This document shows, in pieces, positions 31,391 to 62,701 of a stretch of DNA of 64,000 nt. The position numbers and the translations under genes were made by a program. Each line of letters begins with the position of its first letter. Position 1 is the stretch's first letter. The stretch is from contig CBFFRQ010000038.1 of assembly GCA_965644315.1 (NCBI GenBank), positions 124,001 to 188,000 on the forward strand. Direction: 5' to 3'. The notes under the pieces are model-generated. The model was not told the DNA's origin. It saw only the letters and a list, made by a program, of their open reading frames with translations, and ran no database searches. Source of the stretch: Caecitellus pseudoparvulus. Lineage: Eukaryota > Protista > Bigyra: Bicosoecida.

Positions 31391-34300
31391 CTAACTTGAG
31401 CTACTTGCTGAGCTGTCTTGCTCTGCCTCGCGGCCACCTTGCGCTGCGCTGGCCAGCACAGATCTCAGGTCAGCGATGCAACCTGACCCAAACAGCCCAA
31501 AGCACCTCGCATTACATCTACCCCACACCTCAGTATTGAGGTTTTGTTGTGCTTCGCTCCTGGCAGAGCAGTACACGAAGCACAACTCAACATCCTCTGG
31601 AGTCACAGTCGACACCGAGAAGGTTTCTGAGCTGTGACTCGCCTCCGCAGCTCCTGTGCGATCGGGCACCTCTGCCTGATGCAACTGAACGTCCAAGGAG
31701 GGGCTACCTTGCCCTTCTTTCCACACACCATCCACAATGATGGGAATACCCAACATGGAGAAGATGGTGCTCGCTAGGGTGGCTGACCCCTGGGGTCGAG
31801 CAGCACCACCTTCCGTGGCTGCGCCCTCCCGGTTGTGGGGAATGCCTGATGGCCCGGGCGCTTTCCAGCCTCCAGTTGCAACTAGCTTGACGATGTCTTT
31901 CAGAGCCCCCGGCACGTTGACCTGCCCACCTGCGCTGCCCTCGCTTCCTGTCAACACGAACTTCAGCGACCGGTGGCTTGAGTGAACGATCAGTGTCGAC
32001 GTCGTCGCCTCCACAAAGGCGACTTGAAGGATCATGCGTTCACCCCGCTTGACCCATTTGAAGGCCAAGTAGTCAACACCAGGAAAGTTGCGCTGGGTGT
32101 GAATCAAGAGCACCTGGTTGACTTTCAGTTTATGCAGCATGGTGATATGCTCTTGGTTGATGCCGCTGGAGTCCTCCGTCGAGCCCAAGCGTTCCAGGAT
32201 GCGCTCGCTGAGCGCAACGGCTTGCATACCTTCGAAGAAGCTCCCACTGGCCCACGCCTCATGCAGATCGAGCTCCTCCGCCTGCCCTGTCAAATTCACG
32301 TACAATCCGCCAAACAAACCCATGTAGAGCAGTACGCCAACTTGGCTCTCGAAAAGGTCAGCTACTATGGGGGCGTTCCCCTCAACCACCTTGCCTGCCC
32401 ACATGTCGTCGAGGTGGTCCTGGGACGCCCCACACGAAACCTCTCCGGACAAGGAGAGCATCGCATGAGTTGCGACTCCGAAAGCAAGATCAGACCCACG
32501 AAAGGGGCTCTCAGTGAATCCGCGCAGATACGGAAACTGCGGGCTTGGCGCAGTTGCGTCTGCCACCAGCTGCAGCAGGTTCTTGAGAGGCAGCCTGGCG
32601 TCTCCTCCTGCCCGAGAACCCAACCACTCGACCAATTGGCGCTTCAAGGACCGGCTCCGTTCCTTGATGATGCCAGCGACAAGTTCGCTGGCCACCTTAA
32701 ACGCCTTTTCTGCGTCAGCATGCTCGCAGGTCTTGAGGGCCGCAACCAAGCGCAGCAGAACGCGCGGCTCGCCTCCGACACGGGCCACAAGCTGAGTGAG
32801 CTTGCCCTTGAAGTCGTCGGAGCCTCCAACCAGCACTCGAATATTTTCTGGAAGGGCCATGCACGCAACTGTTGCTTGCATGGCGTGCTGGGTTGAGCAG
32901 GTTGCACCAGCACCGGCAGCGGCGTTCGCTGCTCCTTCGCCCGGCTGCTGGTCTTCCAGAAACAGGAGGTGCTCGGCGAGAGGGTTGGAGAAGGTTCCAA
33001 GGTCGACGACAGGATTCTCAGAGCCCGCATCAAATGCAAAGCTGAAAGTGCTCCCCCGATCCTCTTCATCCGGGAACTCGAAGGACCGCACATCAGGCTT
33101 GTAGGCCAGCACTTTGCATGATGTCGAATCCCACAAAAATAGGGAGTCGAGTGTTCGGCGCCGGGCCGCGGATGCTGCTTCCTTGTGCTGCAGGTAGTCG
33201 CCGTGCAGCTCGTGCGCGTCGTCGACAAGCAGCAGGCGGGGCGTCGGGTGGAGCTGACCCTCCCGCGAGCCACAAAAATATCCGGTTTGCAGGCTCAGGA
33301 TGGCCTGCACCGCATCATCCTCCAAGTAACCGTCCCCAGCTCCCAACAATACAGAACTAATGCGTTCGTCAGCTAGCGCGCCCCCACCAGACAGTGAGAA
33401 GAGACCGTGCAGCAGCGCTTCAGTCACGCCCTCAGCCTCACTAGACCTGGAAGCGCGCCACGCTGACGGCAAAACGAAAGCATCCCCCCAGTCCAATGGT
33501 GATGATCGTGGCAATGGCTCGCAGGCACTCTGTCTTGCCAGTGCCTTCAGCAGACGTCGCCAGCACACCCTGGTCCCTCCCCATGCACGTAGCAAACGCA
33601 CGGGCGAAGAACTCAGCCCTCTGCGGAGTGAGCACAAACTCCGTGAAACCCAGCCTCTGCTGCATGACCTGCCCTGCAGCCGCTCCACTCCCAGAGCCGT
33701 ACCCCAGCGGGATCACGGGCACTTCAAACGGCGGCTCAAAGCACTGCACGTTCGACTTGTCAAGGCCAAACGGCATGCCATCCACGACCGGAAGCCGTAA
33801 GACCACAGCGGCCACCACGCCGTTGACCAGTACTGGGCGGCAGCCTAGGCTCCATGGCGCGCCGTCGTCGCCCGGGCTTGCGCTACTGAACTCAGCGGGG
33901 TTTCGGAGCACCCTCAGCACTTGCCACTCGCAGACATCCCCAGGAATGAAGTTGCCGAATAGGTTCCGCAGCCAAACAAAGCTGTCCTTGATATCAGAGC
34001 TGTCCCGATCCTCAAGGGCCACCGCCGCATCCTCGTACGCGCGGTGGACTCGTGGTGGAGCAGTCGCCAGGCCGCGGATGCTGTCCTTCCCACCCACGAG
34101 GAGGTGGTGCAGCGGTATCCCGACGTTGCACACCTTATGCAACTCGAGCAAGGGCACCTGGGCTGCGTCGTCCCTTGTGCCACCTCGCCGTGGACGAGCG
34201 CCGCGGTGGATCGGCGGCCACCTTCCTGCAGCATGCGAAGCCGAGCTAGGCGCCATGCTGCTCTGCAGGCCCGTCACCAGCTTCTGCAAAGCAACAAAAT

Positions 34301-37300
34301 CCCCAAATATACTGTTAAACTTTCTCTTAGTACGTCGAAAACTTCGATCGTCGAGTTCAGACAGCAATGCAGCAACATCCACTTCTCCCTGTGAAGCACA
34401 CGCAACCAAAGTGGGCGGTGCGTCGAGAATAAGTTTATAGACTGGGTAAATTTTCTGGTGGCAAAAGTGACATTTGAACACTCATCAGTTTGGATTTGAT
34501 CTCCTTCACTTGGCGCCTTTGCCCCTCTCTCCTTGACCGTCACATCGTTTTGAATGTACCCCCCACCTCCTCCGGCACCAGCTCCAACGGGCGCCCCCAC
34601 TGACCGAGGAACGACATTGCGCTACCCAGGCCAGGATGCCGCGAAGAGCTCCAGGGGTGCTAACAACGCACTGTATCAAGGTAGAAAGGTCCAAGGCTGC
34701 TGAATGTCAGCTTTGCTCACTCCGGGCCGCGGCCATTGCACGAGGGTACCATGCTCCACACAAGGGCAGTACCAACTCTGCCTTCGTTGACGGCACTCAC
34801 TACCACTGCTCCTCTGACGTGTGTTTTTGGCGTGCAAAGATGAAAAAGGATTTGAATCTCACTCCTGTGGGGCAGGACGTGTCGTAATGGCAGCAGAAGG
34901 TGCGTACTCGCGTCTTGTGGTGCAAACGGCGTTTCACCCATAACGGCAGCACCAGCTGCGAGCCTTTCCGTACCACAGAGCAAGACGCAGACACTCTAGC
35001 GCCCCAAGAAGCACCACAAGGGCATGAAGAAGGTGAGGCTAAAGCTACTCTCCTGTTTCCTGAAGGTTCTCTGCCCGTACCTACTCTCCCCCATGTCCAC
35101 CCCTGTCCGCAGGCCATCCTGGTGCCCAGAGCCCCGTGGAGGTTACAGTTGCTTCGGTCTCGGTCGAGGATCTATCCCCAGAGTCACTGATAAAATCAGC
35201 GTTGCAGAGCCTGCGCCGCAGCGTTCCTCTGGGGCACGGTAGCACGTGGTCCGACCAGGCGCTGGCCAAGTCTGAAGCTGTTGTCCACAAGTGTGCCCCA
35301 GCAGCCTCCCACCTTCTCCTTCACGGTGACATGAGTCCAGGCGAGCTCACCAAGCAGTGCTCTGCACTGGGGCCCGCTGAGCATTGCCTCCCACAGCCTC
35401 CCAGGGAGGTTCTCGTGCCCACCTGTCCAGCGGCGCTCGCCGGGAACATGAGCACAATCCTGACCGTGTTAATGGCATCGCCCGCCAAGCCTGCCACTGT
35501 TCAGCTTGTTGGGTCGAGCGTGATGATGGTGCGCGCAGCCTTGGGCAGGATGGCGCTCCCTCCACAGCCTGGGGAGGGGGTTGTGCTGGCCTACATGGCA
35601 GACAAGGCAGAGATTGGGATCGCAGCCGCGTTGCGGGACGCACAGGGACCTGTGACTGCCGCTCTTCGGGACAAGGTCCGCAGGATTGAAGGCGGCTTGG
35701 TGTATCGAACCACAGACCGCGAGGAGGAGTGTGTCGGCGAGCAGGGTCTCCTCGGGGGATACACCCACGCAATCCACGAAGACAAGTGGTATGTCGAGAA
35801 ACCTGAGCATGCTGCGGTCGCTGGCACAGCTTACAAGCATTTCATCCCTCACAAGAAGCAGCCCCCAGAGCGGCGGATTCAGGCAGTTGGCGTCGCTGCC
35901 GCACACCCAGCTCTGGGGAGCAGGTTCGATCAAGCGGATGAGGAGACCCACAAGCTGGTCGAAGGACCCATCCCCTGGACACCTGACGGGCACACTTTCC
36001 CCGACAGCGATGCATACCAAGCCAAAGCCGCAGAAGGGGGAGTTTCCTTTCGGTCAGCCATGGCAGCGCGTGCTGAGGAGCCATGGACAGGGGGGGCTGC
36101 AGCTGCAGAGGCTGGCCCGCTGCCTGAGAAGTTGACTGAGATGCTCAGGAACATGGAAAAAGAACTGCAAGAAAGTATGGCCCCAAGTTCGATGGCCATT
36201 CCTTTGCGAATGATGTATGTCCCGGTAGACGGAGGCTCAGACGGACGCCCTGTGGTGCCCTGGGGCATGTGTCCCAAGGCGGACACGGCCGGCACTTGTG
36301 TCTGGACAACAAATGGGATGCAGGAGTGTACGCAGTGCTTGATCACTGGCATGCGTGGCGTGCAGTCGGTCAAAAAGGTCAGGTACACCTGCCAGAAGCA
36401 CGGTGCCTCTGTCCTGGTCGGCACGCAGAAGTTCTGGGAGCTCAAGGACCAGCTTTTCCCCGAGCAGCAGCACGACGGTGCCCCCTTTCCCCATATGGAG
36501 GGGCGCAGGCTGACCCTGTCCATACCTTGTGCACTTGCTGGCTCTCTGCTCCTGGATGAAGATGCAGCAGAGAGTCTGTGGGAGTGCTACGTCGCGCACC
36601 GTCGCGAAGGCATGGCAAAGGTACAGGATGCATTCTACATAGACCTGATGCACCCTTTTCGGGACACGTTTAGGAAGTGGAAGAGAGAGCTGCGACAAAA
36701 GTTCTGGTACCAGAAGGACGATGCCATTGGCAGGGCCGTGGCGGGGATCGTGCGCCGCGTGAGGACCCCCATCGAGGAGAGGCTGCAGCTGAGCACTGGG
36801 GTGGAGGCTTTGCGAGATGCTGTGCTGCATATCTTCCATGTCACAGTGGAGCCACACGTCAGTCTGTACGAGGAAGCCCTAGCACGCTTCGCTGACACCA
36901 TCAGCGTGGACTGGACCTTCGCATCCTCCGCACGGGTGCACGTGGTTGGGCCGAGACCTGGCCAGCTTGATAACACGCAAGCTACTGATGAGCCTGCCGG
37001 GCCTGAAGGGCAGGAGTGCGACGGGGAGCATCTGGATGAAGGTGATGATGAAGCTTGTGAAGACACAGGCAATGTGCAGGCTTTGGCAGCGTGCACAGGG
37101 GATGGCAGCGGTGGCACTGCCACAGCAACTCGGGCCAGAGGCACAACCCGGTGGCGGGTAGCCCCCTGCATAGCCACGGTTGTGGGACGATACGGCTTCA
37201 TCTTGCAGCGTCCCATGCTCACGGGCCACGAGAGTGGGGCCAACCTGGCCTGGGTCCTGGACTTTTTACTGTACAAGCTGAAGGGGCACTTGCGGGAGCG

Positions 37301-40300
37301 TGGCCCGGCGGCGTCCCACCCCATCGTCATCACAGTGGACAACCTCAGGACCCACCAGCACACCCTGCAGAAAATCATCGACGTGCACTTCCCACTGCTG
37401 AAGAAAGGCGTGGTGCGGTTCGCGGTAGACCCGTGGCACTTCGCCAGCCGCGTGACCAAGACCATTCCCAGCAAATCCGTGCACCAAGATGGCAAGATGA
37501 TGTCAAGGCTGTGGTTTGACACTGTACACTGGATACGGACGCCCCCCAGAACGGAAGTGTCTTCGCGCTTGATGCTGCCAGAGCGAGACATTGACAAGCA
37601 GTTGAATGACCTGCCCTCCGCAGGGGAAGCGATCCAGGGATTCAAAGCTTGCGCCCACGCTATCCTTGCACGCAAGCCCCTGAGCCAGGGACAGCAGGGG
37701 GTGGTCAAGTCCTTCCTTGCCAAGTTTGGGTGGGCTGTGTACGAGCCAGGGCGTGCAGTTGGAGCTGCTGCAAGGCTTCGCGAGCACGTCCCCCTTGCTT
37801 TGGCGGCTGTATGTGCCGCTGCTGCCGGCATGCTGCATCGCCGCTCCCGCGGCCAGCCATTCACTGTGACTGCTGAAGGCGTACATGAGGGTGAAGGTGC
37901 CATTCCCATGCTTCCTCTGCACGTGGGCCCAGACCACGTGAAACAAGCTCAGGCTGAGCTGAAGCAGGTTGCCAAGCTCTTCGAGGTAGTCTGGGCGCCC
38001 CCCAGCGAGAGTGGTGCCACATCTGTTGTACGCGGCGCTCCCACTCACGGCATCCTTGAGAAAGGATCTCCCTACACGTTGACTCGATCCCGAGTCAAGG
38101 CCTCATGCAAGAACTTAGTCGGCATTCAGGGTCTGATGAATGGGCGGGATGCGGTTAACGGCGCGACGACAACAGGGGGAAACGAGAGCCTACACGCTGG
38201 GATGCGAGACATGGTGACGGCAAGGACTTCAACCCGCCTCGATGTGGCCAAGATGAACCTGACACTGTACTGGCTGGAGAGGAACCAAGCCACTGCTGCC
38301 AAGCTGCTGTCTAAGTACACCAACTCGCACAGTCGTGGGCGCGAGACCCGATGCAAGGTGGGCAAAGCAGCAGACACTTTGGATCTGCTGTCTGCGTTGT
38401 GCTCTGATGTCACTGACCTTGGTGATGGAGAGATCACTGCGGCGCTTCAACGCAACCCAGTTCCACCCGCCCCACCATCCTTCAAAGAAGTCGAGGCCTC
38501 TGATCTGCCCCTGTACCACAGGGCCACCTCGTCTGTCACCCCAGAGCTAGAACATGAGATTCGCCAGCTGTTCCTGGAGGAGCAGCTGGCACGCAAGGAT
38601 GGGACCTGCCCCTACAGCGAGAAAACCTTGGTATCACGGATTGCCTCTGCAGCACACGCAACAGAAGGGCAGGTGAGGAAAATAGCCCAAAAGATGCAGG
38701 CGGAGGCAGCTGTCCATGATGAAGAGGTCAAGACGCAAAAGCGGAGTGGGGCCAAGACAGGCCACAAACGTGCAGGAGCCAAGGTCAGTCCAAAGGGTGG
38801 GACGGCCATGACAGAAGCAAAGGTCGGTGGGGTCAAGACGAAAGCACGTACTGGTGGAAAGAAGAGGTCCATGGGAACCAAACCCATGCGGAATGTGCCA
38901 AAACGGCCGCGGAGCACGAGCGCAGGCGCTTTCTGACCAGCCAAGTTTCACGGGAGTTTCACCCCAGAGCCAGTCCAACAAAGACGGCCTCCAAACCCAC
39001 AAAGAACGAAGCAGTTCTGAGCTTATTTTACGCCTCGAAATGTATGCCACCAAATAACGCTTCTTGCAGGATCATAGCCATCCCGTACTCTACCGCACCC
39101 TCTGTGGGTCCACATGGAACTCGGCCAGGGAAGAGTGCCAGATGAAACGCCACGCCGGGCCGTTTGCCGAGTCTCCTGAGCACATGAGGCAAGCAAGAAG
39201 CCTACCATACCTTTGAATATTCTAATGCCTCGTATATTTTTCTATTAATACCCAGTTTTGATGAAAAGTTAGTGAAAATTGAGTGTCTGGAGGTGGATGA
39301 AGGGTAAGAGTTTGGAGTCACAGGAAGAGAAGGTAGTCACTAAGAGGACAACAGCTTCCACATCCATCTATCTCAGTCTACAAGACAATTCAGCACAATT
39401 AATCAGGCTACAAAGCATCATCTCTACTTAAAGACGTAAGAACCTGACTCTTGTTGCCGCAACTGAGCTCCTGAGCGTGTACTAGGCGCCGGAGCCTCTG
39501 GGGCGGCTGGTCAAGTTCCGCATTCCGCAACGGTCGGTGCTGATTGGTGGTTTTCTCGAGAGATAGACGATCAGAAGATGCCTTAACGACCAAGACACAA
39601 GATCCCGTGAATTCATGGACTTTCGGTTTGGTTTCACTCATGGGGAGCGCCTGGATGGTCCTGTGGGACAACGCAACAGTCGAGGACAAAGTTGCCCACC
39701 GAAACACGTCCCAGACTTGCCTCAATATCAAGCAAACGGCCCATGCAAGTGAGCACAATAGTGTCCCAATGCTGTTTAAATTCTTTGTACTAGGCCCCAA
39801 ACACAGCTACACACCCTAACACTCACTCCTTTGCCGTCAAGTGCCGTACCCAGTCTATAAACTTATTCTCGTTCACACGCAAAGCGGGTGTGCCAGCCAT
39901 CTTCGCGCGCACGCCCAAAACAAGCCAGCCCTCACCGTAGCGCTCGTGAAGGCCCACTTCACGCAGGTCAATGCAGACTTGTCCACATCAGCGCCATCCA
40001 GTCGCGCGAAAGCGTCCCTCACTCGCTTCCTGTCTCTTTCGGGCAGCCGCCTGACAGCTGCCATGAAACGCCACTCGCCATCCTCGACCATAAATGCCAC
40101 TGCTCCCTCAAACACCGCACGCTGCACAGCGGGGAACAAGTTGCTCGTCAGCAGTTCTGACCAGACTTCCTCGCTCACACCCTCAGGCTTCAGTCGTCGC
40201 GTGGTCCGGCCTTCAGACACAAGCCGTGTGGCTTTGGTCCGCATCCAGCGGTCGAGAAACTCCAGGAGACGCTCCAGTGCTGCCACATCCTCCACCGACT

Positions 40301-41648
40301 CCACCAACGCCTCATACGATGCCTCCAGCACGCCCTTCTGCAGCACTGCCACCACTGATTCAACATCCAAGTCCGCCTGCGATGGCGCACGCACACATAC
40401 GCTCCGTGGCTCTGCCGCAACAATCGGCAAGTCGCATCAACACTCACCCCTTTACGCGCAATGGCGCACTTCGCACAGGCCACAGCAGCAATGTTGGTAT
40501 CTTCATCGTCCAGCTTCTCGAGCGCCTCCTCCACACGCTCCCTGTCAACTGCCGACAGATGCCTCAGGGCGCGCGGCATGTCCCCCTCACCCTCCGCCGT
40601 CATCCTCCCCACAGCAGCCGAGAACTGCGCACGCTGCAGAGCGGGACGCAGGTACGTCCCCAGCAGCTCTGTCCAGGCACCCTCGCTCACACCCTCAGGT
40701 GCCTGTGTCCACCCCTCCTCGATCTTGCTCAGCAACACTGCAGGCGTCTCCACCATGATGCCGGCCATGAGCCCCGCGAGTCGCTCCACCGCAGCCACGT
40801 CCTCGGCAGGCCCCACCACGGCAGTGTGCAGCGCCTTCAGTACGTCTACCTGCACCAGTGCGGCCACTGTGCTCGCCACGCGCAGCTCCTGCGCAGGCAG
40901 CCTTGCTGTGTGAGCCAGCCATGCACACTGGCAGGCCACGCCTTGCGACCACTCACTGCACGTATGAAAGCCCACTTGGCACTGCTGACAGCAGTCGCGT
41001 TGACATCGGCGCCATCCAGTCGGTGGAAGGCTTTCTTCACTTGCTCCTTGTCGGGGTCGGGCAGTGTGGCCAGGGCGTCATTGAAGTGGGTCCTCACAAA
41101 CCCATCCAGGCCTTGTGTGATCAGATCGCCGCTGCCCGCGTCCGCCTGGCGAATGAGTACCATGGCAAGGTCACCTACCATCCACTCGCGTCCTGCTTCA
41201 TCAAGATGCTGCAGCCCAAGCTCTTGTAAGGGCGCCGGGCTGCTGAGCACAGCCAGGAGATCCTCCACACTGTACACCACACAGACCCGCACAACGTCGT
41301 ACAAGGCGGATCCGGTGATGCTCCCTCCTTCAGATCGACTGTAGCGCAGTAGCGCCTGCGCCTGGGTCAGTAAACCGGGTGCCAGGAGGACTTGTGCTGT
41401 CTCCTCATGCACAGCCTGCGCAACAGGCATTGAGAGGGGACGTGCTGCCACGCAGCGCTGCCAGTGTGGGCGGTGATGCTCACTGAGGCGTCGTCAATGG
41501 CATCTGTAGCCTCTTGGATGGTGTGAGCATCCACCCCAGCAGAGGAAAGGACGGAAAGCAGGTCTCTGATCAGTGCCAAAACCTCGCTTCTAGCATCAGA
41601 TGCTGCCACACCAGCTGCGCAGTCTTCAGTCGTCTCAGCGGCAGCCAT
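31391..41648 (-). CDS. Crinkler/RHS (CR)-like effector: N-terminal exon repeats, P-loop NTPase, PD-(D/E)XK-like nuclease; transposon in intron 4 and an apparent frameshift (possible pseudogene)
   Basis: Predicted exons 41648-41484, 41415-40957, 40888-40448, 40376-39936 and 34388-31391; all introns are GT-AG and phase 0. Motifs: Walker A SAEGTGKT (about 33530-33555), Walker B LLLVDDAH, GGEPR, FESQV and NFPGVDY...FVEATTS. Frame change at the G6 run at 33484-33489. Confidence 0.75.
34416..39879 (+). mobile_element. 5.46-kb TIR DNA transposon, copy A (Mutator-like, 9-bp TSD)
   Basis: 33-bp imperfect TIRs with a 25-bp perfect core cgagaataagtttatagactgggta. TSD caaagtggg (34407-34415) / caaagcggg (39880-39888). 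A second copy lies at 53201-58665. Confidence 0.93.
34636..38936 (+). CDS. DxxH-type DDE transposase of copy A; spliced, with a 1-bp frameshift in exon 1
   Basis: Predicted introns at 34900-34978 and 35033-35112. Motifs ISVDWTF (D1), ITVDN (D2), VDPWHF (DxxH) and GGNESLH (E); Lys-rich C-terminus. A5 run at 34843-34847 versus A6 in copy B. Confidence 0.8.
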
Positions 41649-42795
41649 ATCCCACGAACGGCTTAAACTCCGTGCAAATTCGAGATTCACGCGCTTATTT
41701 GTTGCAGATGGCAGCAGAAAGCCAGGGAAAGCCGCTTGACTGCCCGTGGTCGCTGCGATCTGCGTGCCCCCGGTCCTGCTGCGCCGCAGCAGAGCCTTGT
41801 CGAGCGCCCTTCTGCAACTGGGGCAGTCTGAAGAGCAAATGCACAGTGAATCACACAATTTCATCGAAATAAAGGTACTTCTGCATTTGTTTTGTGTCCA
41901 TGCGCGTCCGTTTGGCGTGTCACGCAGCCATCGTTGGCGTGCTGAACCTGCGCAGGAGGCACAGAAATTTGAGGATGACCTGTGGCCTTAGGCACCCTTC
42001 CGTGCACTCAATCTCGGACACGCAGCTTGACGCTGCCTGGTAGCGGCCATTTGAGGACTGATTTGCGGAGGGAAAGTCAAAACCTTGCGCTAGAGCCGCA
42101 TCACTGTTCATTGAGTCCAAGTGCACTGCACTTCGCAGAGCAGCGCGTGATGGGACGAGATTGTAGCAAAGATACTGCGCTTTGTGGCCATGGCACTCCA
42201 ATGGGTGAAATATAGCTCTGCTGCCAAGCTGATTGGGGTAAACAGGTCGCTGTGGCTGCTGCTGGGACGAGGATTGAGCTGCTGCATGTTGCCAGATCCA
42301 CCACCAAGTCACACACCATGCTGTGCCAAGCCCATTCAAGTTCCTGATCATTTGCATAATATGCCTGCCAGGCAGTGCCCGGTGCCCCATTGGTAAAAGC
42401 TGCCTTCGAACCCAGCACCATGCCTGGGCCCAGCGTCTGAAGGGCGCCCGCGGTCTATGGACTTGAAGCACGTCCAAGAGCATGTCTTGCTTGAGTAGTC
42501 AGTCCCCATTGACGCAGGCCACGGCAACCCAACAGGCTTCACGTGGGGCGCGGGCGAAGGCTGTCGGATCGGCACAAGGGGAGCTCATGCTTGGGAGACC
42601 AGCCAATCTGCCATGGCCAGCATGCCTTGTGTGGTGAATGCATTGAACACTGCATTGGAAAAGCATGGCGTGGGCCCCAAACGCGCATGCGCTGCTCTGG
42701 CACGTTGCTCGTCTGCTCACGCTTCATTGGACTTCGCCCCGTGCTTGGCACAAGCACAGTGCTCGCTGCCTCAGATGGCGGCGGTTGCGTGCTGG

Positions 42796-49519: not shown

Positions 49520-50043
49520 GTGCGCGAGCTTTCACCCTGGAGGGCACCGCCACGTCACACGCCTCGCTGTGCCAAGCCCATTCAAATCCCTGATTATTTG
49601 CACAATATGCCTGCCAGGCAGTGCCCGGTGCCCCATTGGTAAAGGCTGCCTTCGAACCCAGCACCATGCCTCGGCCCAGCGTCTGAAGGGCGCCCGCGGT
49701 CTATGGACTTGAAGCACGCACCGAAGCACGCACCGAAGCACGCCTCAGACCGTGTCTGCCTTGATTGAGCAGGCAACCACACTGCCGCAGTCCACGACAA
49801 CCCAACAGGCTTCAAGCGGGGCGCAGGCGAAGGCTGTCGGGTCGGCGCAAGGGGGGCTCATGCTTGGGACACAGGCCGATCTGCCATGGCTAGCATGCCT
49901 TGTGTGGTGAATGCATTGAACACTGCATTGGAAGGGCATGACGTGGGCCCCAAACGCGCATGCGCTGCTCTGGCACGTTGCTCGTCTGCTCTCGCTTCAT
50001 TGGACTTCACTCAACGCTTGGCACAAGCACAGTGCTCGCTGCC

Positions 50044-53151: not shown

Positions 53152-53200
53152 GTGCGCGAGCTTTCACCCTGGAGGGCACCGCCACGTCACACGCCTCGCT

Positions 53201-56200
53201 CGTGTGAACGAGAATAAGTTTATAGACTGGGTACGGCACTTGTCGGCAAAGGAGTGAGTGTTGGGGTGTGAAGCTGTGTTTGGGGCCAAGTACAAAGAAT
53301 TTAAACAGCATTGGGACACTATTGCGCTCACTTGCATGGGCCGTTTGCTTGATATTGAGGCAAGTTTGGGACGTGTTTTGGTGGGCAACTTTGTCCTCGA
53401 CTGTTGCGTTGTCCCACAGGACCATCCAGGCGCTCCCCATGAGTGAAACCAAACCGAAAGTCCATGAATTCACGAGATCTTGTGTCTTTGTAGTTAAGGC
53501 ATCTTCTGATCGTCTCTCTCTGGAGAAAACCACCAATCAGCACCGACCGCTGCGGAATGCGGAACTTGACCAGCCGCCCCAGAGGCTCCGGCGCCTAGTA
53601 CACGCTCAGGAGCTCAGTTGCGGCAACAAGAGTCAGGTTCCTACGTCTTTAAGTTGAGATGATGCTTTGTAGCCTGATTAATTGTGCTGAATTGTCTTGT
53701 AGACTGAGATAGATGGATGTGGAAGCTGTTGTCCTCTTAGTGACTATCTCCTCTTACTGTGACTCCAAACTCTTACCCTTCATCCACCTCCAGACACTCA
53801 ATTTTCACTATCTTTTCATCAAAACTGGGTATTAATAGAAAAATATAAGAGACATTAGAATATTCAAAGGTGTGGTAGGCTTCTTTTTCGTTTCATGTGC
53901 TCAGGAGACTCGGCAAGCGGCCCGGCGTGGCGTTTCATCTGGCACTCTTACATGGTCGAGTTCCATGTGGACCCACAGAGGGTGTGGTAGAGTACGGGAT
54001 GGCTATGATCCTACAAGAAGCGTTATTTGGTGGCATACATTTCGCGGCGTAAAATAAGCTCAGAACTGCTTCGTTCTTTGTGGGTTTGGAGGCCGTCTTT
54101 GTTGGACTGGCTCTGGGGTGAAACTCCGGTGAAACTTGGCCGGTCAGAAAGCGCATGCGCTCGTGCGCCGCGGCCGTTTAGACAGATTCCGCATGGGTTT
54201 GTTACCCATGGACCTCTTTTTCCCACCAGTACGAGCTTTCGTCTTGGCCCCACCGACGTGGGCTTCTATCTTGGCCGCCCCACCCTTTGGACTGACCTTG
54301 GCCCCCGCACGTTCGTGGCCTGTCTCGGCCCCACTCCGCTTTTGCGTCTTGACCTCTTCATCTTGGACAGCTGCCTCCGCCTGCATCTTTTGGGCTACCT
54401 TCCTCACCTGTCCTTCCGTTGCGTGTGCTGCAGAGGCAACCCGTGATACCAACGTTTTCTCGCTATAGGGGCAGGTCCCATCCTTGCGGGCCTGCTGCTC
54501 CTCCAGGAACAGCTGGCGAATCTCATGTTCTAACTCCGGGGTGACAGACGAGGTGGCCCTGTGGTACAGGGGCAAACCAGAGGCCTTGACTTCCTCGAAG
54601 GTTGGTGGGGCGGGTGGAACCGGGTTGCGTTGAAGCGCCGCAGTGATCTCTCCATCACCGAGGCCAGTGACACTAGAGCACAACGCAGACAGCAGATCCA
54701 AGCTGTCTGCTGCTTTGCCCGCCTTGGATCGGGTCTCACGCTCGCGGCTGTGCGAGTTGGTGTACTTAGACAGCAGCTTGGCAGCAGTGGCTTGGTTCCT
54801 CTCCAGCCAGTACAGTGTCAGGTTCATCTTGGCCACATCGAGGCGGGTTGAAGTCCCTGCCGTCACCATGTCTCGCATCCCAGCGTGTAGGCTTTCGTTT
54901 CCCCCTGTTGTCGTCGCGCCGTGAACCGCATCTCGCCCATTCATCAGACCCTGAATGCCGACTAAGTTGTTGCATGAGGCCTTGACCCGGGATCGAGTCA
55001 GTGCGTAGGGGGATCCTTTCTGAAGGATGCCGTGGGTGGGAGCACCGCGTACAACAGATGTGGCACCACTCTCGCTGGGGGGCGCCCAGACTACCTCGAA
55101 GAGCTTGGCAACCCGCTTCAGCTCAGCCTGAGCTTGGCTCACGTTGTCTGGACCCACGTGCAGAGGAAGCATGGGAACGGCACCTTCACCTTCATGTACA
55201 CCTTCAGCAGTCACAGTGAATGGCTGGCCGCGGGAGCGGCGATGCAGCATGCCGGCAGCAGCGGCACACACAGCTGCCAAGGCGAGGGGGACGTGCTCGC
55301 GAAGCCTTGCAGCAGCCCCGACTGCACGCGCTGGCCCGTACACAGCCCACCCAAACTTGGCAAGGAAGGACTTGACCACCCCCTGCTGTCCCTGGCTCAG
55401 GGGCTTGCGTGCAAGGATAGCATGGGCGCAAGCTTTGAATCCCTGGATCGCTTCCCTTGCAGAGGGCAGGTCATTCAACTGCTTGTCAATGTCTCGCTCT
55501 GGCAGCATCAAGCGCGAAGACACTTCCGTTCTGGGGGGCGTCCGTATCCAGTGAACAGTGTCAAACCACAGCCTTGACATCATCTTGCCATCTTGGTGCA
55601 CGGATTTGCTGGGTATGGTCTTGGTCACGCGGCTGGCGAAGTGCCACGGGTCTACCGCGAACCGCACCACGCCTTTCTTTAGCAGTGGGAAGTGCACGTC
55701 GATGATTTTCTGTAGGGTGTGCTGGTGGGTCCTGAGGTTGTCCACTGTGATGACGATGGGGTGGGACGCACCCGGGCCGCGCTCCCGCAGGTGTCCCTTC
55801 AGCTTGCACAGTAAGAAGTCCAGGACCCAGGCCAGGTTGGCCCCACTCTCGTGGCCCGTGAGCATGGGACACTGCAAGATGAAGCCGTATCGTCCCACAA
55901 CCGTGGCTATGCAGGGAGCTACCCGCCACCGGGTTGTGCCTCTGGCCCGAGTTGCTGTGGCAGTGCCACCGCTGCCATCCCCTGTGCACGCTGCCAAAGC
56001 CTGCGCATCGCCTGTGTCTTCACCAGCTTCATCATCATCTCCATCTGGATGTTCTCCGTCGCACTCCTGCCCTTCAGGCCCGGCAGGCTCATCAGTAGCT
56101 TGCGTGGTGTCATGTTGCCCAGGCCTCGGACCAACCACGTGCACCCGTGCGGAGGATGCGAAGGTCCAGTCCACGCTGATGGTGTCAGCGAAGCGCGCTA

Positions 56201-58665
56201 GGGCTTCCTCGTACAGACTGACGTGTGGCTCCACTGTGACATGGAAGATATGCAGCACAGCATCTCGCAAAGCCTCCACGCCAGTGCTCAGCTGCAGCCT
56301 CTCCTCGATGGGGGTCCTCACGCGGCGCACGATCCCCGCCACGGCCCTGCCAATGGCATCGTCCTTCTGGTACCAGAACTTTTGTCGCAGCTCTCTCTTC
56401 CACTTCCTAAACGTGTCCCGAAAAGGGTGCATCAGGTCTCTGTAGAATGCATCCTGTACCTTGGCCATGCCTTCGCGACGGTGCGCGACGTAGCACTCCC
56501 ACAGACTCTCTGCTGCATCTTCATCCAGGAGCATAGAGCCAGCAAGTGCACAAGGTATGGACAGGGTCAGCCTGCGCCCCTCCATATGGGGAAAGGGGGT
56601 ACCGTCCTGCTGCTGCTCGGGGAAAAGCTGGTCCTTGAGCTTCCAGAACTTCTGCGTACCGACAAGGACAGAGGCACCGTGCTTCTGGCAGGTGTACCTG
56701 ACTTTTTTGACCGACTGCACGCCACGCATGCCAGTGATCAAGCACTGCGTACACTCCTGTATCCCATTTGTTGTCCAGACACAAGTGCCGGCCGTGTCCG
56801 CGTTGGGACACATGCCCCAGGGCACCACAGGGCGTCCGTCTGAGCCACCGTCTACCGGGACAGACATCATTCGCAAAGGAATGGCCATCGAGCTTGGGGC
56901 CATACTTTCCTGCAGTTCTTTTTCCATGTTCCTGAGCATCTCAGTCAACTTCTCAGGCAGCGGGCCAGCCTCTGCAGCTGCGGCCCCCCCTGTCCATGGC
57001 TCCTCAGCACGCGCTGCCATGGCTGACCGAAAGGAAACTCCCCCTTCTGCGGCTTTGGCTTGGTATGCATCGCTGTCGGGGAAAGTGTGCCCGTCAGGTG
57101 TCCAGGGGATGGGTCCTTCGACCAGCTTGTGGGTCTCCTCATCCGCTTGATCGAACCTGCTCCCCAGAGCTGGGTGTGCGGCAGCGACGCCAACTGCCTG
57201 AATCCGCCGCTCTGGGGGCTGCTTCTTGTGAGGGATGAAATGCTTGTAAACTGTGCCAGCGACCGCAGCATGCTCAGGTTTCTCGACATACCACTTGTCT
57301 TCGGTGATTGCGTGGGTGTATCCCCCGAGGAGACCCTGCTCGCCGACACACTCCTCCTCGCGGTCTGTGGTTCGATACACCAAGCCGCCTTCAATGCTGC
57401 GGACCTTGTCCCGAAGAGCGGCAGTCACTGGTCCCTGTGCGTCCCGCAACGCGGCCGCGATCCCAATCTCTGCCTTGTCTGCCATGTAGGCCAGCACAAC
57501 CCCCTCCCCAGGCTGTGGAGGGAGCGCCATCCTGCCCAAGGCAGCGCGCACCATCATCACGCTCGACCCAACAAGCTCAACAGTGGCAGGCTTGGCGGGC
57601 GATGCCATTAACACGGTCAGGATTGTACTCATGTTCCCGGCGAGCGCCGCTGGACAGGTGGGCACGAGAACCTCCCTGGGAGGCTGTGGGAGGCAATGCT
57701 CAGCGGGCCCCACTGCAGAGCACTGCTCGGTGAGCTCGCCTGGACTCATGTCACCGTGAAGGAGAAGGTGGGAGGCTGCTGGGGCACACCTGTGAACAAC
57801 AGCTTCAGACTTGGCCAGCGCCTGGTCGGACCACGTGCTACCGTGCCCCAGCGGAACGCTGCGGCGCAGGCTCTGCAACGCTGATTTTGTCAGTGACTCT
57901 GGAGACAAGTCCTCGACCGAGACTGAAGCAACTGTAACCTCCACGGGGCTCTGGGCATCAGGATGGCCTGCGGACAGAGGTGGACATGGGGGACTGCAGG
58001 TACGAGCTGAGAGCCTGCAGGAAACAGGAGAGAAGCTTCAGCCTCACCTTCTTCATGCCCTTGTGGTGCTTCTTGGGGCGCTAGAGTGTCTGCATCTTGC
58101 TCTGTGGTACGGAAAGGCTCGCAGGGGGTGCTGCCGTTATGGGCGAAACGCCGTTTGCACCACAAGACGCAAATACGCACCTTCTGCTGCCATAACGACA
58201 CGTCCTGCCCCACAGGAGTGAGATTCAAATCCTTTTTTCATCTTTGCACGCCAAAAACACACGTCAGAGGAGCAGTGGTAGTGAGTGCCGTCAACGAAGG
58301 CAGCGTTGGTACTGCCCTTGCGTGGAGCAAGGCACCCTCGTGCAATGGCCGCGGCCCGGAGCGAGCAAAGCTGACATTCAGAAGCCTTGGACCTTTCTAC
58401 CTTGATACAGTGCGTTGTAAGCACCCCTGGGGCTCTTCGCGGCATCCTGGCCTGGGTAGCGCAATGTCGTTCCTCGGTCAGTGGGGGCGCCCGTTGGAGC
58501 TGGTGCCGGAGGAGGTGGGGGGTACATTCAAATCGATGTGACGGTCAAGGAGAGAGGGGCAAAGGCGCCAAGTGAAGGAGATCAAATCCAAGTTGATGAG
58601 TGTCCAAATGCCACCTTTGTCACCAGAAAATTTACCCAGTCTATAAACTTATTCTCGACGCACCG
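53201..58665 (-). mobile_element. 5.46-kb TIR DNA transposon, copy B (inverted relative to copy A)
   Basis: Same TIRs as copy A. Perfect 9-bp TSD cgcctcgct at 53192-53200 and 58666-58674. The empty site is visible in sister units, e.g. gtcacacgcctcgctgtgccaag at about 49554. Confidence 0.96.
54144..58445 (-). CDS. DxxH-type DDE transposase of copy B; spliced and apparently intact
   Basis: ATG at 58445 (MPRRAPGV...CQLC...HCSSDVCFWRAKMKKGFESH), two introns as in copy A, then a 1266-codon main exon with VDWTF, VDN, DPWH and NESLH. Confidence 0.85.
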
Positions 58666-59149: not shown

Positions 59150-61676
59150 TCAGATGGTGGCGGGCGCTTGCTGGTCACCCAACGAAGCCCCCGCTCGTGT
59201 CCGCACTACATCCTCAAACGCTGGGCGCATGTGAGCCCTCCACAGCTCCGTGCAGACTTCCTCACTGATGCTCTCAGGCCTCTTCGTCCACCCTTCCTCC
59301 ATCTCCCTCATCAACACCTCAGGCGTCATGGACATGCACTTCTCCATGAAGTTCAGGTGCCGCTTCAATGCAAGCCCATTCTCTTTTTGTTGCACCAGCG
59401 CCTTGTACGTCTCCTCCAGCACGGTTGGCTGCAGCAGCGCAAGAAATGAGTCTTCCACTGCTCCGATCTGCGACACGAGAAGACACAAGCCAGTCGTGAG
59501 CCGGGCTTACACTCCCAAGATCTTTCACAGGCGTCGGGACATGCAGCGCACTCACTCCCAGACGAACAAAGGCGCACTTCGCACTCAGCACAGCATCCGG
59601 GTTCACCTCACTTGGCTCCACCTTTCTCACAGCTTTACTGATGCGTTCCTGGTCTCCTTCAGACAGCGTCTTCAGGTCCTCCTCGAAATGCTCCTCAACA
59701 TCGGCCACCATGCGCGCCCGCATCCGCCCAAACAGTGCACGCCCCAGGCGGTCATCCAGCAGCCCTGTCCAGTCTGCATCGCTCACACCCTTTGGCCTCC
59801 GCACTCGTGCGCTGGGTACATCACCCGAGTGCTCGACCACATTCAAGCGCATGCATGCCTGCATGAACGCCCCGTGACGCTTCAATGCAGCCACATCATA
59901 TGGCCGCGCAACCAGCAATTTGTACGTCTCGCTCAGCATACTTGGCTGCAGCATGACTTCCGCAGAGTCCGCCACTGCTACGTTCTGCAACGCGAACACA
60001 GTGACACTGTGAGCCAGCCTCGCACACGCAAAACCAAGTCAAGCCAGCACTCACCGACATGCAAACGAAAGCCTCCTTTGCACTGACCACAGCAGTCTTG
60101 TCCACATCGGCACCGTCCAGGTTTGCAAAGGCTTTCACCACTCGCTCCCTGTCTTCATCCGGCAGCCGCCTCAACGCGGCTGCAAAGCGCCGCTCCCCTT
60201 TCTCCTTCAGGCGCGCCACAGCCGTCCCAAACACAGCACGCTTCAGGGCGGGGCGCAAGTTGTTCGTCAGCAACTCTGACCAGACTTCCTCGCTCACACC
60301 CTCAGGCTTCATATGTTGCGTAGTCAGGCCCTTAGACTCTAGCCGAGTCAAGCTAACAAACATGCAGTGCGCAAGGAACTCCCGGAGACGCTCCAGTCCT
60401 GCAACATCCTCCGCCGACCCCACCAACGCCTTGTACGCTGCCCCAAGCATGCCTGGCTGCAGCACCGCGACTGTTGACTCAACTATCAAACACACCTGCG
60501 AAGGCGTACGCTCGCCCAATGGCCAAGCCACACACACGGCAAGTTGCATCAACACTCACCCCTGTACGTGCAATGGCGCACTTCGCACAGGCCACAGCAG
60601 CAACGTTGGCGTTCTCAGCACCCAGCTTCTCGAGCGCCTCCTCCACACGCTCCCTGTCAACTGCCGACAGATGCCTCAGGGCGCGCGACATGTCCCCCTC
60701 ACCCTCCGCCGTCATCCTCCCCACAGCGGCCGAGAACTGCTCACGCTGCAGGGCGGGACGCATGTAGTCGGCCAGCAGCTCTGTCCAGGCGCCCTCCCTC
60801 AAACCCTCAGGTGCCTGCCTCCACCCCTCCTCGATCTTGCCCAGCAACGCCGCAGTCGTCTCCACCATGATGCCGGCCATGAGCCCCGCGAGGCGCTCCA
60901 CCGCAGCCACGTCCTCGGCAGGCCCCACCACGGCAGTGTGCAGCGCCTTCAGTACGTCTGGATCCACCAGTGCGGCCACTGTGCTCGCCACGCGCAGCTC
61001 CTGCGCAGGCAGCCTTGCTGTGTGAGTCAGCCATGCATACACGGGCAGGCCACGCATTGCGTCCACTCACTGCACGTATGAAAGCCCACTTGGCACTGCT
61101 GACGGCAGTCGCGTTGACATTGGCGCCATCCAGTCGGTGGAAGGCCTCCTCCACTTGCTCCTTGTCGGGGTCGGGCAGGGTGGCCAGGGCGTCCTTGAAG
61201 TGGCTCGCAAGGTCCAGCACTTGCGTCTTGTCCAGGCAGTGACTCTGCACACCAGCACAAAGGGGAGGGTGCACCCACACAGCATTACCAGTGTGCGCGG
61301 CGGTGCTCACTGGAGCGTCTTTGATGACAGCAGTAGCCTGTTGCATAGTGCGTGCATCCGGCCCAGCAGAGGCAAAGTGGGCGGGCAGCGCGAAGACAGA
61401 GCTCTCGTGCTGAAACGCCAGCGCGCGCTTCCACTCCACACCCTCAATCTCGCGCTGGCTTCCCCGTGGGGAGAGCGTGCTGGGCCCTCCATCTGGGCTG
61501 AGCGGTGAGGGCGAATGTAGGGAAGGAATCCCATGTGCATACCCCTCCTTCGGGCGCTGCTGCGTCGGCGTCGTGCACGATGCAGAAGTAAAGGCATGGC
61601 GTGCAATTTCCGCAAGCCCCTTGGGTGGAATTGGGCGCTGGGCACGCAATGCGGCTTGCAACGCGACAGTCAGCAT
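59150..61676 (-). CDS. Exon-repeat protein, paralog 4 (near-identical to paralog 3)
   Basis: Listed ORFs match those of unit 3 apart from a few substitutions. Confidence 0.7.
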
Positions 61677-62701
61677 CGCAACTTGTCCTTGTGTGATCGA
61701 CAAACGTGGCAGCCAAAGTAGGGCAGGGCCCTTTTGGGTGGTGGGGCTGCATTTGGTTTTGCAGCGCGACAGTGCTTGACAACGCCTGGACATCGCAGGT
61801 CTCACCACAGTACGATCAGTCTACAGTGACGAGGGTGGCACCAGAGTAAACCGGCGCTTGCTTTTTCTGTCTTCTCGAGGACCAGTAGGCTGGACTACAT
61901 CACGCTTTCCCCGTACGATGCTGCTAGGCGCGTGCAGCCGACAATGCCTGGCTGCGAGGCCTGCAACACGCGCCCTTCCGCCTCATGGCCAATCTTGACC
62001 GCTCCAATCCACAGCTCCTGCACGAACTTGCCCTAGCGGCCGTGGTTCGCAAGCCACAGCGCAGGGTTTGAAACAGCGTCCCGGGAATTCAACGACATCT
62101 CCTGCACACTGTCAGTCCCCCCCACGTCCAATCCAGCCCTCCAATTCAGTTCCATGCCGCGACTTGTAATCTGTGCGAGCTTGAAAACTGTGCATTGACA
62201 GTGCGGCACTTACCTCAGCATTGCGAGTTGTGGAAGATACAGTCTTGTGACTCCCCCAATCTGACGGAGCCTCCGACTCTGCTGACACAGCTCTCCCCCC
62301 CATGGCCATGGCTCGGCAGGTGGACAGGTCTGCGCAGCTTGCTTGCTCGATGAAAGATGGGACAGAAAGAATGTGCTTGGTGCGCTGCACTCACATCCGC
62401 GCGCAGTGCTCGGGACGGACTACTGCGGGGCCGACCACACTTCGAGCAGTGGTCGAGCATTGCCCACCCCTTGCCAATGTTCCAACTTTCGCCTGAAACT
62501 CCACATTTGCGTTGCAGCACGTACATGCAATTTCTAGTCCCAAGGTGCTTCTGCATCCTGCGACCTTCGCTGTACACGCGACTGTTCAGCAGGGCAACGG
62601 CAGCTGTCGGCTGCGGAAATTGGCTGCCCGCGCTTTGGCTCCAAACGCAAGAGCCGACGCAGGCCGTGCCAACATCCACCCCGGTGTGGCGCTGTAGCAT
62701 C

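What the first reader, a model, noticed from the sequence alone, without database searches (positions are those of the whole stretch)
31391..61912. Candidate modular effector or immune locus: one CR-type NTPase-nuclease gene downstream of an array of repeat-only paralogs
Seen: five same-strand genes share an unrecognised repeat of about 147 aa. Only the most downstream gene continues into Walker A/B, GGxPR and NxPGxD...ExT motifs; the four upstream tandem copies stop after about 4.5 repeats. Known: CR (Crinkler/RHS) proteins have a variable N-terminal header joined to an NTPase + restriction-endonuclease-fold C-terminus, and they diversify by recombination. Inference: the array may be a reservoir of header cassettes that exchange into the effector gene, or may encode decoy/adaptor partners of it.
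Basis: partly seen in the sequence, partly recalled or inferred. Interest (0 to 1): 0.85.

Follow-up and report, generated by a model that had tools for sequence, protein, structure and literature searches.

The report
ATPase-nuclease gene with header-only paralog array
A marine protist carries a large gene that joins a new 147-residue helical repeat to an ATPase and a probable nuclease, and next to it sit four intact, transcribed genes made of the repeat alone that swap sequence with it, which looks like a modular conflict (toxin or immunity) locus of the Crinkler/RHS kind.

Summary
On the minus strand a 3.63-kb unit occurs about five times (39.9-62 kb). Four units are complete six-exon genes made only of a 147-aa repeat, with one repeat per 441-nt phase-0 exon. 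The downstream unit supplies three repeat exons to a gene whose last exon (34388-31391) encodes an AAA+ ATPase and a probable PD-(D/E)xK-like nuclease. A 5.46-kb transposon lies in the intron between them.

The ATPase call is solid. The nuclease call rests on motif geometry and on restriction-endonuclease folds dominating weak structural matches. The repeat has no Pfam or PDB relative.

The array genes are not decaying: splice sites and frames are intact, dN/dS is 0.42-0.58, and a seawater metatranscriptome contig has one array-gene intron precisely removed.

Sequence exchange is real. A ~700-nt block (exon 2 to exon 3, intron included) is 86-94% identical between the big gene and the array, beside ~70% flanks, and a related strain carries an array-type 5' end on its big gene.

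Genome-wide, repeat-only genes sit beside deeply diverged repeat-headed ATPase-nuclease genes at eight loci, four tail-to-tail. This favours a partner role.

I file it as Crinkler/RHS-like by architecture. No sequence-profile link was found.

The parts
31391..34388 (-). Last, large exon of the ATPase-nuclease gene. It holds a degenerate half-repeat, a beta-rich linker, an AAA+ NTPase, a helical region and a PD-(D/E)xK-like C-terminal domain, with the stop at 31391-31393.
   Evidence: ORFs. The intact 999-aa equivalent on contig C104 is L002:255-3251:-.
33484..33489 (-). G homopolymer where the window copy is out of frame. The run is two bases shorter than in three other natural copies.
34416..39879 (+). 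Transposon copy 1 (5464 nt, 1266-aa ORF at 35136-38936) inside the intron between the last repeat exon and the large exon. The 9-bp target duplications are at 34407-34415 and 39880-39888.
   Evidence: Inverted repeat with copy 2 at 96-97%. Empty site in the related-strain contig L006 and in C54.
39936..41648 (-). Header exons of the ATPase-nuclease gene: E1' 41648-41484 (starts with ATG), E2' 41415-40957 (diverged full repeat), E3 40888-40448, E4 40376-39936.
   Evidence: The same exon join (repeat exon to large exon) appears in the database gene model P0001.
42796..45300 (-). Repeat-only gene of array unit 2 (E1 45300-44935, E2 44867-44694, E3 44623-44183, E4 44112-43672, E5 43606-43178, E6 43089-42796).
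   Evidence: Joints at the E1/E2 and E5/E6 introns in a metatranscriptome.
46439..48938 (-). Repeat-only gene of array unit 3 (E1 48938-48573, E2 48506-48333, E3 48262-47822, E4 47753-47313, E5 47249-46821, E6 46732-46439).
50044..52570 (-). Repeat-only gene of array unit 4. Exon plan as in unit 3, with a different 10-residue C-terminal tail caused by a 1-nt difference.
53201..58665 (-). Transposon copy 2 (ORF 54144-57944), inserted between array units 4 and 5. The unoccupied target is visible at 49560-49568 in the neighbouring unit.
59150..61676 (-). Repeat-only gene of array unit 5. Its exons E2-E6 differ from unit 4 at only 5 positions (E2 98%, E3-E6 99-100% identical). Array similarity ends near 61924.

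Best explanation
This is a lineage-specific, Crinkler/RHS-like conflict locus of a marine stramenopile. The downstream gene encodes a roughly 1500-residue protein: a short leader, three copies of a new, probably helical 147-residue repeat, a degenerate half-repeat junction, an AAA+ ATPase of the ORC/Cdc6/MuB-like kind, a helical region, and a C-terminal PD-(D/E)xK-like nuclease domain. By analogy, the repeat header is the variable recognition or delivery module, the ATPase is the switch, and the nuclease is the effector that cuts nucleic acid. The four upstream genes encode the header alone: leader, repeats, junction half-repeat, stop. They are live genes. I infer two roles for them. First, they are recombination partners: exon-sized blocks move between them and the header of the big gene, and among themselves, by gene conversion or unequal crossing-over. 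Second, they are protein partners that share the header's repeats, acting as regulator, antidote, decoy or adaptor. Shown here: the gene anatomy, the ATPase fold, intact and constrained array genes, RNA splicing of one array-gene intron, mosaic exchange, and recurrent pairing across the genome. Inferred: nuclease activity, the direction and function of exchange, physical interaction, and the biological target.
For: Anatomy. A database gene model from a related strain (92% identical) joins the repeat exons to the large exon at the same splice sites. The empty transposon site restores a 73-nt GT-AG intron.

Nuclease: in the domain model (pLDDT 79.6) the invariant Asp lies just before the second core strand and the conserved Glu-x-Thr lies in the third. 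By my reading of the entry titles, about 30 of the top 50 VIA rows are restriction-endonuclease-fold proteins, including HamA, FokI, Avs3 nuclease, Can2, XPF/ERCC1, NucS, CdiA-CT and McrC. ESM Atlas neighbours are HamA, Rpn/Transposase_31, PDDEXK_4, PDDEXK_2 and UPF0102/NERD.

Array genes alive: all AG/GT sites and frames are intact. dN/dS is 0.42-0.58, with Fisher p from 2e-6 to 9e-4. A 250-nt metatranscriptome contig lies 192 + 58 nt either side of the predicted E5/E6 intron with nothing between, and a second joint falls at the E1/E2 intron.

Exchange: segment identities and the array-type 5' end in the related strain.

Pairing: a repeat-only gene lies beside a repeat-headed ATPase-nuclease gene on contigs C38, C54, C74 and C196 (tandem) and on C93, C32, C43 and C26 (tail-to-tail). 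The six of these ATPase-nuclease proteins compared (C38, C74, C196, C93, C32, C26) are 20-31% identical between lineages; C74 and C196 are 67% identical to each other.
Confidence: 0.55

Rival explanations
1. NLR-like intracellular immune sensor rather than a delivered effector. The N-terminal repeats bind a non-self ligand, the AAA+/STAND-like ATPase oligomerises, and the nuclease degrades nucleic acid in the cell itself (abortive defence). Header-only genes act as decoys or inhibitors.
For: Structural neighbours of the ATPase include MalT, plant NLRs, CED-4 and archaeal STAND-like ATPases. Nuclease neighbours include the defence nucleases HamA, Avs3 and Can2. The gene sits in a region rich in transposons, and a guanylate-binding-protein gene lies about 15 kb away. 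The leader of the big gene is acidic and has no obvious hydrophobic signal sequence by eye.
Against: Domain order is the reverse of known STAND immune proteins, which place sensor repeats C-terminal. No ligand, oligomerisation or induction data exist. This overlaps heavily with the best explanation and differs only in where the nuclease acts.
Confidence: 0.22
2. The ATPase-nuclease ORFs are the machinery of a selfish mobile element (MuB/TnsC-like ATPase plus TnsA/Rpn-like nuclease), and the repeat genes are cargo or debris dragged along.
For: There are about 35-40 genomic places, many on short contigs or beside transposons. The ATPase resembles MuB and TnsC. Atlas neighbours of the nuclease include Rpn/Transposase_31.
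Against: The copies aligned are mostly 20-31% identical in protein across subfamilies, not near-identical as in an active element. The genes are spliced to variable upstream exons. The region between the two real transposons carries no terminal repeats of its own. No DDE or other integrase travels with them. The paralogous locus C54 shares flanks at 95% identity, as expected of a segmental duplicate and not of transposition.
Confidence: 0.08
3. The array is a neutral by-product of unequal crossing-over: duplicated 5' fragments of the big gene with no function of their own.
For: Units 4 and 5 are virtually identical, and unit 3 is 100% identical to unit 4 over 1.2 kb. The paralogous locus has one unit instead of four. 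Exons are not more conserved than flanking non-coding DNA at the nucleotide level.
Against: All 20 repeat-region exons (E2-E6) in the four units keep frame and splice sites, and the E1 start codon is kept in each. dN/dS is significantly below 1. The terminal exon, which is specific to repeat-only genes, is spliced in RNA. Repeat-only genes with the same ending (half-repeat, 10-65 residues, stop) exist at more than 12 other places, with repeats only 17-30% identical to these.
Confidence: 0.1

Closest known systems
CR (Crinkler-RHS-type) effectors with NTPase + HTH + REase C-termini (Zhang et al. 2016, as summarised in PMC5289972)
   Same: The order is the same: a variable N-terminal header, then a P-loop NTPase, a helical region and a restriction-endonuclease-like domain. 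Other shared features are lineage-specific multicopy expansion, headers that can be alpha-helical instead of ubiquitin-like, occurrence in free-living eukaryotes, and association with transposon-rich DNA.
   Different: No detectable sequence-profile match to Pfam Crinkler or RHSP. The header is a tandem 147-residue repeat with one repeat per exon, which PMC5289972 does not describe. The nuclease signature is D...ExT rather than D...(D/E)xK. Header-only genes are arrayed beside the effector gene.
Trypanosomatid RHS (retrotransposon hot spot) multigene family
   Same: A large, rapidly diverging multigene family of NTPase-containing proteins in repeat-rich regions that are invaded by mobile elements. 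Here a transposon sits inside the gene's intron.
   Different: No hit to the RHSP Pfam model. The host is a stramenopile, not a kinetoplastid. The genes here are spliced and exon-modular.
Bacterial polymorphic toxin loci (Rhs, CdiA) with orphan cassettes and immunity genes
   Same: A full-length toxin-like gene lies next to an array of partial paralogs that recombine with it, and a small partner gene is repeatedly linked to the toxin gene.
   Different: Here the arrayed modules are N-terminal headers, not C-terminal toxin tips. They are complete, spliced, expressed genes rather than promoterless fragments. No immunity function has been shown.
STAND/AAA+ NTPase-nuclease defence proteins (Avs/AVAST, Hachiman HamA-HamB) and paired plant NLRs
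   Same: An ATPase switch is coupled to a PD-(D/E)xK-type nuclease. A repeat domain is the likely recognition part. Genes occur in adjacent pairs, including divergent or convergent pairs.

Membership tests
CR (Crinkler-RHS-type) effectors, NTPase+REase class | P-loop NTPase domain with Walker A and B | tested here: met
CR (Crinkler-RHS-type) effectors, NTPase+REase class | Restriction-endonuclease (PD-(D/E)xK) fold domain C-terminal to the NTPase | tested here: inconclusive
CR (Crinkler-RHS-type) effectors, NTPase+REase class | Distinct, shuffled N-terminal header domain (ubiquitin-like or alpha-helical) | tested here: inconclusive
   The header is modular and differs between paralogs and between strains. 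Helical character rests only on a crude propensity profile.
CR (Crinkler-RHS-type) effectors, NTPase+REase class | Sequence or profile relationship to established CR families (Pfam Crinkler PF20147, RHSP PF07999, or the CR NTPase/REase profiles of Zhang et al.) | tested here: not met
   No such Pfam hit in 22 + 31 members at E up to 0.05 and 0.01. The original CR profiles are not available here, so a remote relationship is not excluded.
CR (Crinkler-RHS-type) effectors, NTPase+REase class | Lineage-specific multicopy expansion | tested here: met
   39 to 46 matches in the 30.6-Mb genome, about 35-40 places. Only 56 hits in 1.84 billion representative proteins.
AAA+ ATPases (ORC/Cdc6/MuB-like) | Walker A, Walker B, a lid-domain arginine motif, and an alpha-beta-alpha core plus helical lid | tested here: met
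   Motifs are (GGxAR in the helical region after the core).
PD-(D/E)xK nucleases | Catalytic D ... (D/E)-x-K triad on the alpha-beta-beta-beta-alpha-beta core | tested here: not met
   Asp is invariant and Glu is largely conserved, but the third position is a nearly invariant Thr. A conserved His and Lys follow 8-13 residues later. Variants with a displaced or replaced Lys are known from the literature (my own knowledge), so activity is not excluded.
Autonomous transposable element | Terminal repeats, target-site duplication, and near-identical dispersed copies | tested here: not met
   These features belong to the two inserted elements, not to the ATPase-nuclease or array units. Paralogs are mostly 20-31% identical.
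Known repeat or housekeeping domain (for the 147-aa repeat) | A match to any Pfam family or solved structure by sequence | tested here: not met
   46 repeat exons give only scattered single hits at E above 0.005. The profile against PDB has best E 0.016 to a designed repeat protein. Only 6 homologs are found in 5.8 billion proteins within the length window. ESM Atlas gives no usable hit.

The most novel reading that the evidence does not exclude
Header-only proteins and the AAA+-nuclease protein form a conserved two-gene conflict module. The header-only protein binds the matching repeat header of the nuclease, as antidote, decoy or adaptor. Its gene also serves as a donor for exon-level gene conversion that re-targets the nuclease. 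This would be a eukaryotic counterpart of polymorphic-toxin loci with orphan cassettes, built on a previously unknown repeat fold.
Probability: 0.25. Interest if true: 0.8.

Novelty: new variant of a known kind. Interest (0 to 1): 0.62.

Why it matters
Crinkler/RHS-type proteins are widespread in eukaryotes, but how their variable headers diversify, and what controls their toxic domains in free-living organisms, is largely unknown. This locus offers three things. It has a header built from exon-sized repeat cassettes. It has visible sequence exchange between the effector gene and neighbouring header-only genes. And the header-only and effector genes are paired across deeply diverged paralogs. 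If the header-only proteins regulate or re-target the nuclease, that would be a new organisational principle for eukaryotic conflict systems, and the 147-residue repeat would be a new protein module to characterise.

Tried and rejected
1. An intron to explain the two overlapping ORFs at 33441-33688. Rejected: three other natural copies read straight through, and the only difference is a homopolymer length.

2. Pfam on every piece and on 99 family members. Only weak AAA hits for the ATPase appeared, nothing for the repeat or the nuclease domain, and no Crinkler or RHSP hit.

3. PDB sequence searches with single sequences and with three profiles gave nothing meaningful.

4. A weak NNH1 (NACHT N-terminal helical) hit for a two-repeat ORF was seen in only 1 of 46 repeat exons, so I treat it as noise.

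5. ESM Atlas feature search gave nothing for the repeat. For the nuclease part it gave unnamed clusters, mostly from Mucoromycota.

6. The second look at Foldseek's list with VIA did not improve the nuclease matches.

7. The leader exon E1 as a widely shared targeting header. Rejected: it occurs only in this array and its paralogous locus.

8. Naming other organisms that carry the family. Distant homologs lie on unnamed contigs of one very fragmented NCBI assembly and in metagenomes.

9. The original CR paper (Zhang et al. 2016) is not held in the library, so I used a review that summarises it.

Each exon was used by reference, and the only spliced sequence used was the database's own model, P0001.

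Full report
**Setting**

The window is G000:C38:124001-188000 of a 30.6-Mb, 215-contig eukaryotic genome with about 60% G+C and short GT-AG introns. A kinesin gene at 7963-11658 has its best named relatives in oomycetes and bolidophytes at 43-50% identity. The host is therefore most likely a stramenopile. DNA of the locus occurs in marine metagenomes. Near-identical genes appear on contigs of an assembly labelled Symbiodinium sp. KB8, presumably from a co-cultured organism; that origin is my inference.

**Layout**

A 3.63-kb unit is repeated head to tail from about 39.9 to 61.9 kb. Two copies of a 5.46-kb element with a 1266-aa ORF lie in inverted orientation at 34416-39879 and 53201-58665 and are 96-97% identical.

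- Copy 2 sits exactly at a unit boundary. The neighbouring unit shows the unoccupied target (49560-49568), which gives a 9-bp duplication.
- Copy 1 is flanked by CCCGCTTTG and CCCACTTTG. Removing it restores a 73-nt GT-AG intron, which is present uninterrupted in the related-strain contig L006 and in the paralogous locus on contig C54.
- A PIF/Harbinger-like element (DDE_Tnp_4 hit) occupies roughly 26650-31154, just downstream of the big gene, and is also absent from C54.

**Gene models**

Profile-HMM matches to the repeat, splice-site inspection and a five-unit alignment give the same plan in units 2-5:

- E1: 122-codon leader, with the ATG conserved in all four units
- E2: 174 nt, the last third of a repeat
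- E3 and E4: 441 nt each
- E5: 429 nt
- E6: the first two thirds of a repeat, then 10-12 residues and a stop

Every border of E2-E6 is AG/GT, and every intron between these exons is phase 0.

Unit 1 has a different leader (41648-41484) and a diverged full repeat (41415-40957), followed by E3 and E4. Its E4 donor at 39936 faces the acceptor at 34388 of the large exon, also in phase 0.

The database gene model P0001, from the related strain and 92% identical, makes exactly this join. All searches and folds used single exons, unspliced ORFs or database proteins by reference.

**The large exon**

In the window it is split into two overlapping ORFs. An otherwise identical 3264-nt contig (C104), the C54 paralog and the KB8 contig all read through as one frame. 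The sole difference is the length of a G run at 33484-33489, which is two bases shorter in the window. This is either a homopolymer assembly error or a very recent frameshift.

I used the intact natural copy (L002:255-3251:-, 999 aa) for analysis. It has about 35-40 relatives in its own genome, mostly single ORFs of 1000-1230 codons, but only 56 hits in 1.84 billion representative proteins.

Conserved features in 22 paralogs and 31 distant homologs are Walker A, Walker B, a GGxAR motif in the helical region, and FPxxD ... VxFxExTxSxLxxH...K near the C-terminus.

**ATPase**

Pfam gives only weak AAA_22, AAA_16 and AAA_29 hits. An AlphaFold model built on the 22-sequence alignment (mean pLDDT 63, pTM 0.61) gave these matches:

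- Foldseek: MgsA, ORC/Cdc6, CED-4 and MuB.

The NTPase call is therefore confirmed at motif and fold level.

**Nuclease**

The C-terminal 251 residues were folded alone on a 48-sequence alignment (pLDDT 79.6, pTM 0.81). The invariant Asp lies just before the second strand of a three-strand meander that follows a helix. The conserved Glu-x-Thr lies in the third strand. This is the geometry of a PD-(D/E)xK core.

- VIA rows include HamA, FokI, AF1548, the Avs3 nuclease, N.BspD6I, EcoO109I, Can2, ERCC1/XPF, NucS, CdiA-CT, McrC and MspJI. By my reading of the entry titles this is about 30 of 50 rows.
- ESM Atlas neighbours are HamA, Rpn/Transposase_31, PDDEXK_4, PDDEXK_2 and UPF0102/NERD.

I read this as a probable but divergent member of that fold, with Thr in place of the canonical Lys. 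Catalytic competence is open.

**The repeat**

Forty-six repeat exons from 20 places (17-84% identical to the reference exon) align over 140 columns with no invariant residue.

- They match no Pfam family; hits are scattered, single and above E 0.005.
- They match no solved structure by sequence.
- Only six database proteins match, all from the KB8 assembly or marine metagenomes.
- The ESM Atlas gives nothing.

A crude propensity profile predicts five or six helices, which is weak evidence. 'Unrecognised repeat' stands.

**Are the array genes alive?**

- All E2-E6 exons in all four units keep frame and splice sites, and each unit keeps the E1 start codon.
- Pooled dN/dS between units is 0.42-0.58, significantly below 1 (Fisher p from 2e-6 to 9e-4).
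- In a seawater metatranscriptome (run X16), a 250-nt contig lies 192 nt on one side and 58 nt on the other side of the predicted E5/E6 intron of unit 2 (43090-43177, GT..AG on the minus strand), with no letters between.
- A second joint in that run skips the predicted E1/E2 intron (44868-44934); whether letters lie between its two sides is not recorded.

E6 is specific to repeat-only genes, so a gene of this type is transcribed and spliced in a close relative (about 92% identity). No RNA run of the source organism was on offer.

**Exchange**

Identity between unit 1 and the array is as follows:

| Segment | Identity |
|---|---|
| Upstream of E2 | unalignable |
| 3' part of E2 | 86-89% |
| Intron 2 | 90-94% |
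| E3 | 93-94% |
| Intron 3 | 69-78% |
| E4 | 69-73% |

Because the intron shares the high identity, the block reflects shared recent ancestry (gene conversion or crossing-over), not selection.

- Synonymous divergence shows the same contrast: about 0.1 in E3 against about 0.6 in E4.
- The E4 of the big gene and the E4 of the array are old, separate lineages, each conserved at 90-94% in C54 and, for the big-gene type, in KB8.
- Within the array, units 3 and 4 are 100% identical over 1.2 kb (5' flank to E2) and then 84-89% identical from intron 3 to E5. Units 4 and 5 are virtually identical.
- The KB8 relative's big gene carries the array-type 5' flank, E1 and E2 instead of the unit-1 leader.
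- C54 has one upstream unit where the window has four.

Recombination at exon-scale boundaries, including between the array and the effector gene, is thus documented. Its direction and adaptive value are not.

**Genome-wide pattern**

The repeat occurs at 122 places. Terminal half-repeats fall into two classes. Some run on for 590-956 codons into an ATPase-nuclease ORF (contigs C74, C196, C93, C32, C26, C95). The others stop after 10-65 codons; these are repeat-only genes on C38, C54, C74, C93, C32, C26, C30, C43, C66, C65, C70, C19 and C95. Repeat-only genes therefore look like the header plus junction of the big genes without the payload.

A repeat-only gene lies within about 2 kb of a repeat-headed ATPase-nuclease gene at eight loci:

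- Tandem: C38, C54, C74, C196.
- Tail-to-tail: C93, C32, C43, C26.

The six of these ATPase-nuclease proteins that I compared (C38, C74, C196, C93, C32, C26) are 20-31% identical between lineages, and C74 and C196 are 67% identical to each other. The C54 copy is a 97% paralog of C38 and is not independent, and C43 was not in the comparison. Even so, the linkage spans several deeply diverged lineages and is either old or has arisen repeatedly. Tail-to-tail pairs cannot supply exons by splicing, so they point to a protein-level partnership or to co-regulated inheritance. Other repeat-only genes, including tandem arrays on C66 and C70, have no ATPase-nuclease match on their contigs in my searches.

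**Interpretation**

The architecture matches what is published for CR proteins: a variable header, sometimes alpha-helical, then NTPase, helical region and REase, multicopy, and also found in free-living eukaryotes (PMC5289972). I could not show family membership by sequence. I therefore call it CR-like in how it is built and probably in how it works: an ATP-gated nuclease with a diversifying recognition or delivery header.

What is new is the exon-modular 147-residue repeat header and the linked, expressed, recombining header-only genes.

Rivals are an NLR-like self-acting immune sensor (a variant of the same idea), a mobile-element machinery, and a neutral duplication by-product. The evidence disfavours the last two.

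**Limits**

- The repeat was not folded.
- There is no RNA evidence from the source strain or for the big gene.
- The homopolymer was not checked against reads.
- The host is identified only to a broad group.
- The pairing count is from six-frame matches, not from a full annotation.

Noticed in passing
window 34416-39879 and 53201-58665: Two 96-97% identical copies of a 5.46-kb element with imperfect terminal inverted repeats (perfect over about 24 nt), 9-bp target duplications and a 1266-aa ORF that has no Pfam hit. One copy sits in an intron and the other between array units. Empty sites exist in the window itself, on contig C54 and in a related strain.
   Followed up: partly
window about 26650-31154: A PIF/Harbinger-like insertion (ORF 28876-30783 hits DDE_Tnp_4, E 8e-7) lies roughly 240 nt downstream of the big gene's stop. 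It is absent from the paralogous C54 locus.
   Followed up: partly
window 48938-48850 (start of E1 in units 2-5): The conserved leader of the array genes starts MLTVALQAALRAQRPIPPKG. It is basic, has no acidic residue in the first 22 positions, and looks presequence-like by eye. The big gene's own leader is acidic. No targeting predictor was available.
   Followed up: no
window 50068-50130 and 59174-59236 versus 42796-42860 and 46439-46500: A 1-nt difference near the end of E6 gives units 4 and 5 a different 10-residue C-terminal tail and a later stop than units 2 and 3.
   Followed up: partly
window 2620-7560, 7963-11658, 14734-16575, 16631-18148: The G+C-richer left part of the window holds ordinary genes: two C2H2 zinc-finger proteins (5 and 12 fingers), a kinesin, a guanylate-binding-protein-like GTPase and an aldo/keto reductase.
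   Followed up: partly
G000 contigs C66 (1-3719, 67789-71986) and C70 (1-5907): Further tandem arrays of a shorter repeat-only unit (partial, two full repeats, partial, 65-residue tail) have no ATPase-nuclease match on those contigs in my searches.
   Followed up: partly
L006 (contig of the assembly labelled Symbiodinium sp. KB8), about 3510-3760: A run of N flanked by duplicated intron sequence looks like a scaffolding artefact inside the intron that is transposon-free in that strain. The contigs carrying this family in that assembly probably come from a co-cultured stramenopile, not from the dinoflagellate.
   Followed up: no
Read laying on window 39901-45900, run X16: One metatranscriptome contig joins 40889 to 44698 with 3 extra letters and non-canonical ends. 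This fits a relative in which an array-type E2 is followed directly by the E3 next to the big gene, the arrangement seen in the KB8 contig.
   Followed up: partly
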